A stretch of DNA of 63,724 bases, the filler included, from Klebsormidium nitens (lineage: Eukaryota; Plantae; Klebsormidiophyceae), in assembly GCA_000708835.1 (NCBI GenBank). It is 8 parts of 8 records of this genome, joined end to end, with 100 filler letters (N's around TTAATTAATTAA, not from the genome) between each part and the next. Parts side by side here need not be neighbours in the genome. Positions count along the whole stretch, not along the records: positions 59,547 to 61,629 come from DF238745.1; 7 more parts are not named here. One strand, 5' to 3'. The position numbers were made by a program, and so were the translations under genes. The notes under the pieces are model-generated. The model was not told where the DNA came from. It saw only the letters and a program-made list of their open reading frames with translations, and searched no databases. Positions 59,447-61,629 of the stretch are shown piece after piece. Numbering within the stretch: the first letter of the stretch is position 1; each line of letters opens with the position of its first letter.

Positions 59447-59571
59447 NNNNNNNNNNNNNNNNNNNNNNNNNNNNNNNNNNNNNNNNNNNNTTAATTAATT
59501 AANNNNNNNNNNNNNNNNNNNNNNNNNNNNNNNNNNNNNNNNNNNNCCAGCCATCCAGCACACTGTCAGCA

Positions 59572-60175
59572 TGTACCAAGAAATGGAGTATTAATTCTTA
59601 AGAATCTAATGGGCCTCTTTTTGGTACACTGCCAAGCTGCTGGGTATGGCTGGGCTTGCAGCCCCTAAAACGGAATGCCTGCCATCCAGCGCACAAATCA
59701 GCGTGTACCAAGAAACCGCGTATTACTTCTTAAGAATCTAATGGGCGGTTCCTGGTACATCCCGCAGGACATTGCCGGGTCTGCAGAAGCTTTGAGGCCG
59801 CTGCAGCTTTCTGGCGGCGGGACACTCGGTGACGTACTGCCAAATTCTTTCGAGTCGGGGAACGATCGTGTGTACCAAGCAATATTGCACTTCTTCTCAA
59901 AAATCTAATGGGCATTTCTCGAAACATCTTGGCAGGCATGGCCGGCCCCTTAAACGGTGTGAGCGTTTCATTTGGGAGAAAGCTCAGAGGGAGTCGCGAA
60001 CGTGTACCAAGAAACGATGTGTTACTTCTTTAGAATCTAATAGGCGTTTTTCTGGTACACCTCCGAGTTGCAGGGTATGGCCAGCCTCGACTTCCAACCA
60101 TCCAGTCCGCGATGAGCCTGTACCAGGAAACGCTGTAGTACTTCTTTAGAACCTAATGCGTGCTTTTCTGGTACA
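59572..60175. repeat. Array of five ~57-bp imperfect palindromes TGTACCA(A/G)G...(C/T)TGGTACA, homologous to 39173-39818
   Basis: Units start at 59572, 59704, 59871 (right arm decayed), 60003 and 60119; conserved core TTACTTCTT(A/T)AGAA(T/C)CTAAT. Located 5' of the plus-strand KDZ-type gene. Confidence 0.85.
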
Positions 60176-60438
60176 CCTTCAAGTTGCAGGGTGTGGGCAG
60201 CAGCTTTGGTCCTGATGGACCACACATGCCAATTGATGGTTATTAGGAATTGGGCTTTTTGCTGAAAAGAACGGTCCGCGTCAAGTTTGCAAGGTGTGGA
60301 CCAACGTTGGGCGGCCATCGGGCCCACTGCATGACGTTCAACTTTGTGTTCCGCATGATGAGCGGAATTCAGGGTTGCTGCAGAGACTCAGGGCCATCGA
60401 AACGTGCTCAAAGTCACAGCTTTCTCCTCGGTCCCAGG

Positions 60439-61629
60439 ATGAATCCAATGACGGCGTCCCGTGACGAGAAAGGACCCTCCGACATCGTTCTCGTCGCATC
60501 GACCACCCCTGCGGCCTCGGCGAGCCTGCACGAGAACCTGAAGGCCGGTCAAGCCGTCAGGAGTTGTGCGGCGGTCCACTTCGAGGGTCCGGCTCCCGTC
60601 TTCGGCGACATCAGGAGCGTTCCGGCTGCCGTTCCGCCTCTGCCAAATGCAGGAGGCGTGTTGGGCGGCCGTCCCTCCTTTGCCGCTCGACAAGGGGGGC
60701 GCGACTTCGTCTTTGATTACGGGCTGGCCTTCCAACTGCGGCACGCGGACGCCTTCACTCGGAGTGGGTTTGGCTGTGCTTGCATCGGCAGCACATGCCA
60801 TGGGAAGAACCCGGTTTATGTCCGAGGTAGGGAGCCGTTCGTCTGGGAGCGCAAGCGCAATCGGGGTGGGGCGCTCATTTGCCCGGGAGCTGGGGGGCAT
60901 CTCTTGTGCCTTCGCTGCGTGGAGGCCGAATACGACGGAGGGCGGCCCTTTGTGACGGCAGAGACAGGTGGTCCCGTTGCCAAGGAGGACCTGTTCACCA
61001 AGTTCGAGGTCTTTCCTAAGCTTGGAGAGCTGCGGCAGGCGCAGTCGGGGGAGGCGGCGGGAGAAGGGGGGCATCAATTTTATGTGCAGAGACGTGACCT
61101 CGCCCCGTGCCCATACTGTACCGAGCTCAAGGGGACTTCGAGGCGCGGGGTGAAGAGGGCGCTTGAGGGGGGGTCGGCGCCATCAGAGCTTGGCCCCATG
61201 CCAGGCATGCTACTGGAGCTCAAACGGAGTAAGGTCCCGCCGACAGCCGTTGCTCCTGGCCTCTTTCTGGTCCCGCTGATTGGGGGCTCAGACAGGCGCC
61301 TTCTGGACATCACAGTGACCGAGAGGGGGCTCGTGAACGCACCTCGGCTTGTGAGGATTGACCACACGGGGAAGTTCCTGTGCGTGTGCGGACAGAGAGG
61401 GTGCCGAGACCACGAAATGAGCTTCCTGGAGGAGACCCGTCGGCTGGACGGTTGGTGGCAGGGTGGGGTCGCAGACTTTGCGGCTTTTGAAGAGAGCCGG
61501 TCCTTTGTGCGAGAGGTCACGAGCGGCGTCTCGTGGGTCTTGCCAATCGATCAGAGCGGACGGGTTGGGGCGGTTCTCAGAGGGTCAGACGCGGCGGCGT
61601 GGCGCGGCGGGCGGCAGGTGCGAGTCTTT
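60439..61629 (+). CDS. N-terminal (Cys-rich/SWIM) part of a second KDZ/Zisupton-like transposase, open until a gap
   Basis: Colinear with 37870-39050 (PLPNAGGV, FDYG, ICPGxGGHLLCLRC, EGGHxFxVQRRDLxxCPYC, APGLFLVP, CxCGQRxCRxH, LDGWWQ) but without frameshifts. Confidence 0.7.

What the first reader, a model, noticed from the sequence alone, without database searches (positions are those of the whole stretch)
59572..60175. Array of covarying ~57-nt hairpins with CRISPR/TIGR-like layout upstream of KDZ copy B
Seen: each unit is edge (TGTACCAAG) - variable ~9 nt - constant core (TTACTTCTTAAGAATCTAAT, containing the palindrome TTCTTAAGAA) - variable ~9 nt - edge (CTGGTACA). The two variable segments change together and stay roughly complementary: AACCGC/GCGGTT in unit 2, GAAACG/CGTTTT in unit 4, AAACGC/GCGTGCTTTT in unit 5, GAG/CTC in unit 1. 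Spacing is 132/167/132/116, echoing array A despite sequence divergence. Inference: selection for a stem-loop or cruciform of fixed length, such as multiple transposase-binding or recombination sites, or a processed structured ncRNA array linked to the KDZ/XPA-like system.
Basis: partly seen in the sequence, partly recalled or inferred. Interest (0 to 1): 0.75.

Follow-up and report, generated by a model that had tools for sequence, protein, structure and literature searches.

The report
Palindrome repeat array upstream of transposase
Five copies of a roughly 130-base repeat, each carrying a 57-base palindrome, sit just upstream of a multi-copy transposase-like gene of the green alga Klebsormidium; they look like a transposon's own repeated control or binding sites, not a CRISPR- or TIGR-like guide array.

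Summary
Five units start at 59572, 59704, 59871, 60003 and 60119, spaced 132/167/132/116. Four are 56-57-nt imperfect palindromes that fold far better than shuffles; unit 3 has lost its 3' arm. The stated edges, core and variable segments are as described.

"Covarying" is weakly supported. On a fixed alignment covariation equals the shuffle control. An arm-swap test gives only the minimum attainable p of about 0.04.

The layout is not CRISPR/TIGR-like:
- The linkers between hairpins are partly homologous, so whole ~116-167-bp monomers were duplicated.
- The two "variable" segments pair with each other.
- They hold the only CpGs of the intact units.
- No Nop or Cas protein is present.

The ORF 263 bp downstream (60439-61629, cut at the contig end) belongs to a multi-copy family seen only in Klebsormidium. 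It is 71-72% identical to gene models that continue into a CxC4-like cluster and a KDZ-like region.

Best reading (about 0.45): a tandem array of AT-rich palindromic protein-binding sites in the 5' region of a KDZ-like DNA transposon. Rivals are a neutrally decaying minisatellite and RNA hairpins in the leader.

No related DNA could be fetched, so position relative to the element's ends and recurrence in other copies are untested. Interest is modest.

The parts
59547..59563 (+). Upstream flank motif of monomer 1 (CCAGCCATCCAGCACAC). The contig begins inside the array.
   Evidence: family D3: copies at 59547, 59678 and 60094. L0 against L1, z 6.3.
59572..59628 (+). Unit 1: 57-nt imperfect palindrome (hairpin-capable).
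   Evidence: RNA fold -23.2 kcal/mol, z -4.02.
59704..59759 (+). Unit 2: 56-nt imperfect palindrome. Inner stem AACCGC/GCGGTT.
   Evidence: RNA fold -27.1 kcal/mol, z -5.30.
59871..59926 (+). Unit 3: degenerate copy. The left arm and CTAATGGGC are kept; the right arm is lost, so no hairpin forms.
   Evidence: z +1.55; score against its own reverse complement is 3, versus 18-30 for the other units; 66 bits on the + strand.
60003..60059 (+). Unit 4: 57-nt imperfect palindrome. Centre mutated to TTCTTTAGAA.
   Evidence: RNA fold z -3.54.
60119..60175 (+). Unit 5: 57-nt imperfect palindrome, closest to unit 4.
   Evidence: RNA fold z -4.59; 0.88 identity to unit 4.
60060..60085 (+). Downstream flank motif (CCTCCGAGTTGCAGGGTATGGCCAGC). 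It is shared after units 1, 4 and 5, which shows that whole monomers were duplicated.
   Evidence: family D2 (88-nt copies). L4 against L5 z 9.5; L1 against L4 z 4.7.
60176..60330 (+). Flank of unit 5 followed by a degenerate monomer without a hairpin. Relic flank motifs lie at 60282-60299 and 60314-60329.
   Evidence: No significant fold. No match to the covariance model.
60439..61629 (+). First 397 codons, free of stops, of a multi-copy KDZ-like transposase family gene of Klebsormidium. It is cut off by the contig end.
   Evidence: 71-72% identical to P0048 and P0051, whose downstream parts give CxC4 hits and KDZ-like Atlas neighbours.

Best explanation
The array is a diverged tandem repeat. 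It has at least five monomers of 116-167 bp plus a decayed one, in the 5' region (promoter, leader or subterminal zone) of a KDZ-like DNA transposon of a Klebsormidium-type green alga.

Each monomer carries an AT-rich 56-57-bp palindrome. The palindrome is built of two inverted 12-bp half-sites (TGTACCAAGAAA) around a near-invariant core (TTCTTAAGAATCTAAT).

The most likely function is at the DNA level. The palindromes would be multiple binding sites for a dimeric or oligomeric protein, either the element's own transposase (whose lineage-specific N-terminal ~500 aa carries invariant Cys/His clusters) or a host factor. Cooperative loading would help transposition-complex assembly, regulate the adjacent transposase gene, or both, as subterminal repeats do in Mutator, CACTA, hAT and foldback elements. 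Cruciform extrusion of the AT-rich palindrome is possible but not required.

Shown here:
- the repeat, its palindromy and its non-random half-sites;
- the monomer-level duplication;
- the adjacency to a multi-copy KDZ-like gene.

Inferred: protein binding, the identity of the binder, and the position relative to the element's end.
For: Half-sites. There are 10, five per strand, all in hairpin arms, against 1.09 expected by chance.

Palindromy.
- It runs through the centre TTCTT|AAGAA. An RNA stem-loop does not need that; a two-fold symmetric DNA site does.
- With DNA parameters both strands fold equally well.

Conservation pattern.
- The best-conserved parts are sequence motifs: the left arm, the core and CTAAT, which are invariant even in unit 3, the unit that has lost hairpin potential.
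- Hairpin segments are 71-88% identical between units, while the linkers keep only patches of homology.
- The hairpins are AT-rich islands (GC 0.33-0.43) in GC 0.60 linkers.

Association with a transposon.
- The array ends 263 bp upstream of the ATG of an ORF whose family has dozens of diverged copies in K. nitens and related assemblies. Many sit on short contigs or are partial.
- In 1.84 billion representative proteins only 17 relatives turned up.
- Longer members carry CxC4 hits (E 2.5e-4 to 0.044, below threshold) in 5 of 7.
- The nearest named Atlas clusters of P0051 residues 440-1147 carry KDZ or CxC Pfam families, top score 0.95.

Precedent. Tandem subterminal repeats in Muta1 raise transposase binding, cleavage and excision (PMC5499845).
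Against: - No second copy of the array could be examined. Recurrence in other element copies, presence at the other end, and distance to a TIR are therefore unknown.
- KDZ elements can be 10-30 kb (PMC12477816), so a site next to the transposase gene need not be subterminal.
- Spacings of 116-167 bp and 57-bp palindromes are far larger than classical 12-bp subterminal motifs.
- One unit has lost its right arm and a further monomer has lost the hairpin entirely. Constraint is therefore not strict.
- + strand RNA folds are 1-5 kcal/mol better than - strand folds in all four intact units, which leans slightly towards an RNA reading.
- KDZ membership of the ORF rests on sub-threshold and language-model evidence only.
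Confidence: 0.45

Rival explanations
1. Neutral, decaying minisatellite. An ancestral ~130-bp segment that happened to hold a palindrome, for example a small foldback, was amplified in tandem inside the transposon and is simply drifting. On this view the hairpins have no function. The 'constant/variable' pattern reflects CpG hypermutability and AT-rich low-mutability segments.
For: - Whole monomers including flanks are homologous.
- Unit 3 has lost an arm, and the monomer nearest the gene has lost the hairpin.
- Covariation is no higher than the shuffles.
- In the four intact units every CpG lies in the two 'variable' segments, at mirrored positions 13-16 and 41-43. Those segments are therefore expected to vary fastest, and on both arms.
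- With about 10% divergence per unit from a palindromic ancestor, retaining 21-24 pairs needs no selection (inference).
Against: - Hairpin segments are clearly better conserved (0.71-0.88) than the linkers, which keep only patches of homology.
- The arm-swap test puts the native arm pairing at rank 1 of 24 for the inner stem.
- Unit 1 and unit 2 each carry changes on both arms that restore pairing (GAG/CTC and AACCGC/GCGGTT). Not all of these are CpG transitions.
Confidence: 0.27
2. RNA-level hairpins. The array is transcribed on the + strand as part of the transposase leader or as a separate non-coding RNA. The hairpins would act as processing substrates (small-RNA precursors that feed silencing or self-regulation) or as protein-binding RNA elements.
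For: - Units 1, 2, 4 and 5 fold with z -3.5 to -5.3.
- + strand RNA folds are 1-5 kcal/mol more stable than - strand folds in 4 of 4 intact units. There are 8 G-U pairs on the + strand against 5 on the - strand.
- The orientation is the same as the downstream ORF.
- The arm-swap test is suggestive.
Against: - No Rfam family matches. The best is mir-2208 at 22.5 bits against a gathering score of 70, E 0.13.
- The loop and core are the most conserved part and are themselves palindromic, which an RNA hairpin does not need.
- There is no statistical covariation.
- The G-U excess is not significant.
- No expression data are available.
Confidence: 0.17
3. A CRISPR- or TIGR-like guide-RNA array. The variable segments would be spacers that direct the KDZ or accessory protein to targets.
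Against: TIGR arrays are contiguous ~36-nt units made of two alternating 8-12-nt repeats and 9-nt spacers. They lie next to a Nop-domain Tas protein in prokaryotes and their viruses (PMC12045711).

Here:
- the period is 116-167 nt, with homologous linkers;
- the two variable segments are complementary to each other, so they are sequestered in a stem;
- units 4 and 5 have nearly interchangeable arms;
- no Nop or Cas family is found in the ORF or its homologues;
- the host is a eukaryotic alga.
Confidence: 0.01
4. Independent insertions of a 57-bp MITE-like palindromic mobile element into this region.
For: The TGTACC...GGTACA edges look like short terminal inverted repeats.
Against: - The flanks of the units are homologous to each other on both sides.
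- No target-site duplications flank the units, read directly: CAGCA|unit|CTGCC, CAGCG|unit|TCCCG, GAACG|unit|CCTCC, GAGCC|unit|CCTTC.
- The regular spacing fits tandem duplication.
Confidence: 0.02

Closest known systems
Subterminal tandem repeats of DNA transposons: Muta1 and foldback-type MULEs (PMC5499845). From general knowledge, also the 12-bp TnpA motifs of En/Spm (CACTA) in direct and inverted orientation, and the AAACGG repeats of Ac.
   Same: Multiple copies of a short motif (here a 12-bp half-site, 10 copies) lie in non-coding DNA next to the transposase gene of a cut-and-paste-type element. Inverted pairs are capable of secondary structure. The plausible role is cooperative transposase binding.
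   Different: Here the half-sites are paired into 57-bp palindromes with a conserved 16-20-bp core. These are embedded in 116-167-bp monomers rather than 12-bp repeats with 3-4-bp linkers. The position relative to the element's terminus and presence at the other end are unknown. Binding is untested.
KDZ (Kyakuja-Dileera-Zisupton) DNA transposons
   Same: The downstream gene family continues, in longer K. nitens models, into a CxC4-like cysteine cluster and a region whose nearest language-model neighbours are KDZ/CxC clusters. It is multi-copy. KDZ elements are known in green algae (PMC8226300; PMC12477816).
   Different: No Pfam KDZ domain hit reached even E 10. The ~500-aa N-terminal region has no detectable relatives outside this family. 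TIRs and 8-bp TSDs (PMC11343200) could not be examined. None of the KDZ papers read here mentions such palindrome arrays.
Tandem monomer promoters of transposable elements, such as the 5' monomer arrays of mouse L1 (general knowledge)
   Same: Tandem ~100-200-bp monomers lie directly upstream of the element's ORF. The copies nearest the gene are the most degenerate.
   Different: Those belong to retrotransposons and lack long palindromes. Promoter activity was not tested here.
TIGR arrays (TIGR-Tas; PMC12045711)
   Same: Only the nominal order of conserved edge, variable, conserved middle, variable.
   Different: The unit length, contiguity, independence of the two spacers, the associated Nop protein and the host domain all differ. 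See the membership test.

Membership tests
TIGR array | Contiguous units of about 36 nt made of two alternating 8-12-nt repeats (edge, loop) and two ~9-nt spacers (PMC12045711). | tested here: not met
   The period is 132/167/132/116 nt, with 59-111-nt linkers between 56-57-nt units.
TIGR array | Spacers A and B are independent guide segments, not complementary to each other. | tested here: not met
   The two variable segments pair with each other within each unit. Units 4 and 5 have interchangeable arms.
TIGR array | Adjacent Tas protein with a Nop domain, in a prokaryotic or viral context. | tested here: not met
   No Pfam family was found in the ORF or in 22 homologues other than sub-threshold CxC4 and noise. 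The named relatives are all Klebsormidium nitens and the rest are unnamed JGI, ENA and Logan entries. Only 2 kb of context is available.
CRISPR array | Near-identical 25-36-nt direct repeats separated by unique spacers of similar size. | tested here: not met
   The units are 69-100% identical to the reference copy and the inter-unit linkers are mutually homologous (several pairs with p of 0.01 or less).
Transposon subterminal repeats / transposase-binding sites | Multiple copies of a short motif, in non-coding DNA of a transposon. | tested here: met
   10 half-sites against 1.09 expected, lying 263 bp upstream of a multi-copy KDZ-like ORF.
Transposon subterminal repeats / transposase-binding sites | Located within a few hundred bp of the element's terminus and present at both ends. 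| not testable with these tools
   The contig begins inside the array. No related DNA was retrievable.
Transposon subterminal repeats / transposase-binding sites | Bound by the element's transposase. | not testable with these tools
   This needs EMSA, footprinting or a DAP-seq-type assay.
KDZ transposon | Transposase with a KDZ catalytic domain (PF18758). | tested here: inconclusive
   The window ORF is cut before that region. Longer homologues P0051 and P0046 give no Pfam KDZ hit at E up to 10. The Atlas neighbours of P0051 residues 440-1147 carry KDZ or CxC Pfam families (0.95, 192 shared features).
KDZ transposon | CxC-type cysteine cluster N-terminal to the KDZ domain. | tested here: inconclusive
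   PF18717 CxC4 is hit in 5 of 7 longer homologues, with E 2.5e-4 to 0.044 and 14-21 bits against a cut-off of 26.9.
KDZ transposon | Terminal inverted repeats and 8-bp target-site duplications (PMC11343200; PMC12730594). | not testable with these tools
   The element's ends are not in the 2,083-bp piece.
Known structured RNA family (Rfam) | A match at or above a family's gathering score. | tested here: not met
   The only match is mir-2208 at 22.5 bits against 70, E 0.13.
MITE-like insertion | Units flanked by target-site duplications and by unrelated sequence. | tested here: not met
   The flanks are homologous between units. No duplications are seen at the unit borders.

The most novel reading that the evidence does not exclude
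The palindromes could be functional single-strand structures that have co-evolved with a lineage-specific, Cys-rich N-terminal module of a KDZ-like transposase. They would be either RNA hairpins processed from the transposase leader or extruded DNA cruciforms. That would be a structure-specific rather than sequence-specific recognition system for a eukaryotic cut-and-paste transposon, or a transposon-encoded hairpin-RNA cluster that tunes its own silencing. The evidence does not exclude this: the arm-swap test is at its minimum p, and + strand folds are better in 4 of 4 intact units.
Probability: 0.1. Interest if true: 0.7.

Novelty: new member of a known kind. Interest (0 to 1): 0.3.

Why it matters
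KDZ elements are among the largest and least understood eukaryotic DNA transposons. None of the KDZ papers read here describes their cis-acting sites beyond TIRs and TSDs. If this palindrome array recurs at the ends or promoters of the Klebsormidium copies, it would give a concrete candidate binding site for a KDZ-type transposase and its lineage-specific zinc-cluster N-terminus. That would make end recognition and autoregulation in the superfamily testable. If it is only a decaying minisatellite, it is ordinary transposon-internal repeat DNA. Either way it is not a new guide-RNA system.

Tried and rejected
Searches for related DNA
- The protein-anchored scan of metagenome contigs found no relative.
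- The hairpin pattern GTACCARGAAA-N8-14-TTCTTNAGAANCTAAT gave 0 matches in metagenome, genome and viral collections.
- Protein scans of genome contigs and viral contigs found none.
- Searching the protein database with a translation of the array (106-aa ORF at 59829-60146), to detect arrays elsewhere through spurious ORFs, found no hit. That result is uninformative.

Identifying the ORF
- Pfam on the window ORF and 15 homologues of up to 672 aa found no family at a meaningful level, only three chance-level zinc-finger-type hits.
- The PDB profile search found nothing.
- AlphaFold2 on the 13-sequence alignment gave pLDDT 42.7, so no fold search was run.
- The Atlas search on the N-terminal 397 aa gave only RING-finger clusters at chance-level scores of 0.83 or less.
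- The full HMMER profile search found only 17 proteins, all from the same family.

Further units
- The covariance model R1 found no units in the piece beyond the five.
- The candidate sixth unit (60216-60330) keeps flank motifs but does not fold.

Readings rejected: the TIGR/CRISPR reading, the MITE-insertion reading and a known Rfam family. See the membership tests.

Papers: the Zisupton and Iyer et al. papers are not held in the library.

Full report
**Scope**

Only the piece 59547-61629 (2,083 bases) is real sequence. The protein database lists the ORF's own entry on a 2,083-bp contig, so the piece is a whole short contig.

**1. The observation**

The repeat finder returns a five-member family, D1, starting at 59566, 59698, 59865, 59997 and 60113. 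Start-to-start spacing is 132/167/132/116, exactly as reported. Trimmed to the palindromes, the units are as follows:

| Unit | Coordinates | Length |
|---|---|---|
| u1 | 59572-59628 | 57 nt |
| u2 | 59704-59759 | 56 nt |
| u3 | 59871-59926 | 56 nt |
| u4 | 60003-60059 | 57 nt |
| u5 | 60119-60175 | 57 nt |

- Folded as RNA, u1, u2, u4 and u5 give long hairpins of 21-24 pairs. Energies are -21 to -27 kcal/mol and z-scores against dinucleotide shuffles are -3.5 to -5.3.
- u3 does not fold (z +1.55). Its 3' arm has decayed to CTCGAAACA.
- The 12-mer TGTACCAAGAAA with up to 3 mismatches occurs 10 times against 1.09 expected, reached by 0 of 100 shuffles. Five sites are on each strand and all are hairpin arms.
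- The left arm is closer to the consensus (0-1 mismatch) than the right arm (2-3).
- A covariance model built from the five units finds nothing else in the piece.

**2.

(a) Each unit aligns with its own reverse complement along its whole length, through the centre TTCTT|AAGAA. The units are true DNA palindromes, not merely stems with a loop.

(b) The repeat is not hairpins separated by unrelated spacers.
- An upstream flank motif (CCAGCCATCCAGCACAC; D3) is shared between several monomers.
- A ~26-nt downstream flank (CC-CAAGTTGCAGGGTATGGCCAGC; D2) is also shared.
- Local alignments of linkers against shuffles give z up to 9.5.
- The duplicated unit is thus the whole 116-167-bp monomer, with indels in the linkers.

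(c) Downstream of u5 the flank motifs recur once more, at 60282-60299 and 60314-60329, without a hairpin. This is a decayed monomer next to the gene. The contig also starts inside a monomer, so the array may be longer.

(d) The hairpins are AT-rich islands, with GC 0.33-0.43. The linkers have GC 0.60 and the ORF 0.64.

(e) In the four intact units, every CpG lies in the two 'variable' segments, at mirrored unit positions 13-16 and 41-43. u1 has none, and the degenerate u3 has one at position 50.

**3. Is there covariation?**

- On a fixed-column alignment (A3) with the u4 structure, 85.6% of cells pair, against 33-53% when the partners are slid. The palindrome is therefore real.
- The covariation score equals the shuffle control, which reaches it in 280 of 500 shuffles. 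Only one pair has a change on both sides, and that change is in the degenerate u3.
- Because the variable segments differ by indels, I also swapped arms between units and refolded. The native 5'/3' combination ranks 2nd of 24 permutations for whole units and 1st of 24 for the inner stem. That is p of about 0.04, the minimum attainable with four units.
- u1 and u2 each fit their own partner best. u4 and u5 are interchangeable.

This is suggestive, not demonstrative. Mirrored CpGs (point 2e) predict fast change at paired positions on both arms without selection. Hairpin-templated repair of a palindrome would also produce apparent compensation.

**4. Strand and molecule**

- With RNA parameters the + strand folds 1-5 kcal/mol better than the - strand in all four intact units. 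There are 8 G-U pairs on the + strand and 5 on the - strand.
- With DNA parameters both strands fold equally well.
- Rfam gives only a sub-threshold mir-2208 match, at 22.5 bits against 70.

The RNA reading stays open but is weakly supported.

**5. The neighbouring gene**

The ORF 60439-61629 (397 codons, no stop, cut by the contig end) has no Pfam family.

- The word search finds 31 relatives at 52-81% identity. Every named one is a Klebsormidium nitens hypothetical protein. Many are 'partial' on contigs of 2-3 kb. The rest are unnamed JGI, ENA and Logan entries.
- A full HMMER profile search of 1.84 billion representatives finds only 17 proteins, all from the same family. The N-terminal ~530 aa is therefore lineage-restricted and multi-copy, the signature of a mobile element.
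- The alignment has invariant Cys/His clusters: C115, C120, C148, H154, C157, C160, C224, C227, C315, C317, C322 and H325. UniRef names one member a SWIM-type domain protein, but Pfam does not confirm this.
- All short gene models end at ...CCSVAYDGQ followed by unrelated tails, which looks like an exon end.
- A region search with that last conserved segment recovers longer K. nitens models: P0051 of 1,147 aa, and P0046, P0048, P0049, P0050, P0054 and P0055.
- Five of these seven hit Pfam CxC4, the 'cysteine cluster associated with KDZ transposases'. E-values are 2.5e-4 to 0.044, below the gathering score.
- No KDZ-domain hit appears even at E 10.
- The language-model neighbours of P0051 residues 440-1147 carry KDZ or CxC Pfam families (top score 0.95, 192 shared features).
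- The window ORF is 71-72% identical to the N-terminal parts of P0048 and P0051.

AlphaFold2 on the shallow alignment failed (pLDDT 42.7), so no fold search was made. The PDB profile search was empty.

**6. Related DNA**

None could be obtained.
- Protein-anchored scans of metagenome, genome and viral contigs found no relative.
- The hairpin pattern has no exact match in any of the three collections.
- A translated-array query finds no protein.

Three questions therefore remain untested: whether the array recurs in other copies, whether it is at both ends, and how far it lies from a TIR.

**7. What it most likely is**

The best-supported reading (about 0.45) is a tandem array of palindromic protein-binding sites in the 5' region of a KDZ-like DNA transposon.

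Arguments for:
- there are ten non-random half-sites in inverted pairs;
- the symmetry runs through the centre;
- the sequence motifs (left arm, core, CTAAT) are the most conserved columns and persist in u3, which cannot fold;
- the hairpin segments are better conserved than the linkers;
- the array lies 263 bp upstream of the transposase start;
- Muta1 gives an experimental precedent, where the number of subterminal repeats raises transposase binding, cleavage and excision (PMC5499845).

From general knowledge, En/Spm TnpA binds 12-bp motifs in direct and inverted orientation in subterminal regions that overlap the promoter, and mouse L1 promoters are tandem monomers.

Binding, the identity of the binder and any role of cruciforms are inferred, not shown.

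Rivals:
- a neutrally decaying minisatellite derived from a palindromic ancestor (about 0.27);
- + strand RNA hairpins in the leader, or small-RNA precursors (about 0.17);
- MITE insertions (about 0.02), rejected because of the homologous flanks and the absence of TSDs;
- a TIGR/CRISPR-like guide array (about 0.01).

**8. Comparison with TIGR/CRISPR**

TIGR arrays are contiguous ~36-nt units of two alternating 8-12-nt repeats with 9-nt spacers. They are processed into tigRNAs, sit next to a Nop-domain Tas protein, and occur in prokaryotes and their viruses (PMC12045711).

Here:
- the period is 116-167 nt;
- the linkers are homologous;
- the 'spacers' are complementary to each other;
- no such protein is present;
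- the host is a charophyte alga.

The resemblance is nominal.

**9. Novelty and verdict**

KDZ elements are known in green algae and can be giant (PMC8226300; PMC12477816; PMC11343200). No paper in the library combined Klebsormidium with any of the KDZ search terms. None of the KDZ papers read describes palindrome arrays.

The finding is a real feature, probably a new instance of the familiar class of transposon-internal or subterminal repeat arrays, in an under-studied superfamily. Interest is modest (0.3). It would rise if genome-wide copies showed structure-specific conservation or processed RNAs.

Noticed in passing
window 60439-61629 (+), residues 115-160, 224-227 and 315-325 of the ORF: Invariant Cys/His clusters occur across 13 family members (C115, C120, C148, H154, C157, C160; C224-x2-C227; C315-x-C317-x4-C322-x2-H325). 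UniRef labels one member a SWIM-type domain protein, and the Atlas gives only chance-level RING-like neighbours. This may be a lineage-specific zinc-binding DNA-recognition module. Pfam finds nothing.
   Followed up: partly
Homologues P0005, P0008, P0009, P0010, P0020, P0037, P0038 and P0043: Eight of the shorter gene models, from different sources, run through the same residues (...CCSVAYDGQ) and then into unrelated tails. Longer NCBI models continue with EDGIFNFSG... This looks like a conserved exon-intron boundary that most gene callers miss, so the family's true proteins are probably over 1,100 aa.
   Followed up: partly
window 59547 (start of the piece): The 2,083-bp contig begins inside a monomer of the array, at the flank motif CCAGCCATCCAGCACAC. 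This suggests that the assembly broke in the repeat and that the array is longer, or is present in several copies in the genome.
   Followed up: no
window 60176-60438: The leader between the array and the ATG holds a decayed, hairpin-less monomer, with relic flank motifs at 60282-60299 and 60314-60329. The ~40 codons in frame upstream of the ATG resemble the N-terminal extensions of P0010 (…AQTHRFYFGARMN against …AQSHSFLLGPRMN). The 5' leader is therefore conserved between copies at the DNA level.
   Followed up: partly
window 59572-60175, unit positions 13-16 and 41-43: In the four intact units all CpG dinucleotides sit in the two 'variable' segments, at mirrored positions. Unit 1 has none (TG where the others have CG), as expected from decay of methylated CpG. 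The degenerate unit 3 has one CpG at position 50.
   Followed up: partly
window 60000-60064 (+): Weak Rfam match of unit 4 to the mir-2208 precursor (22.5 bits, gathering score 70, E 0.13). It is most likely chance for any 60-nt hairpin.
   Followed up: yes
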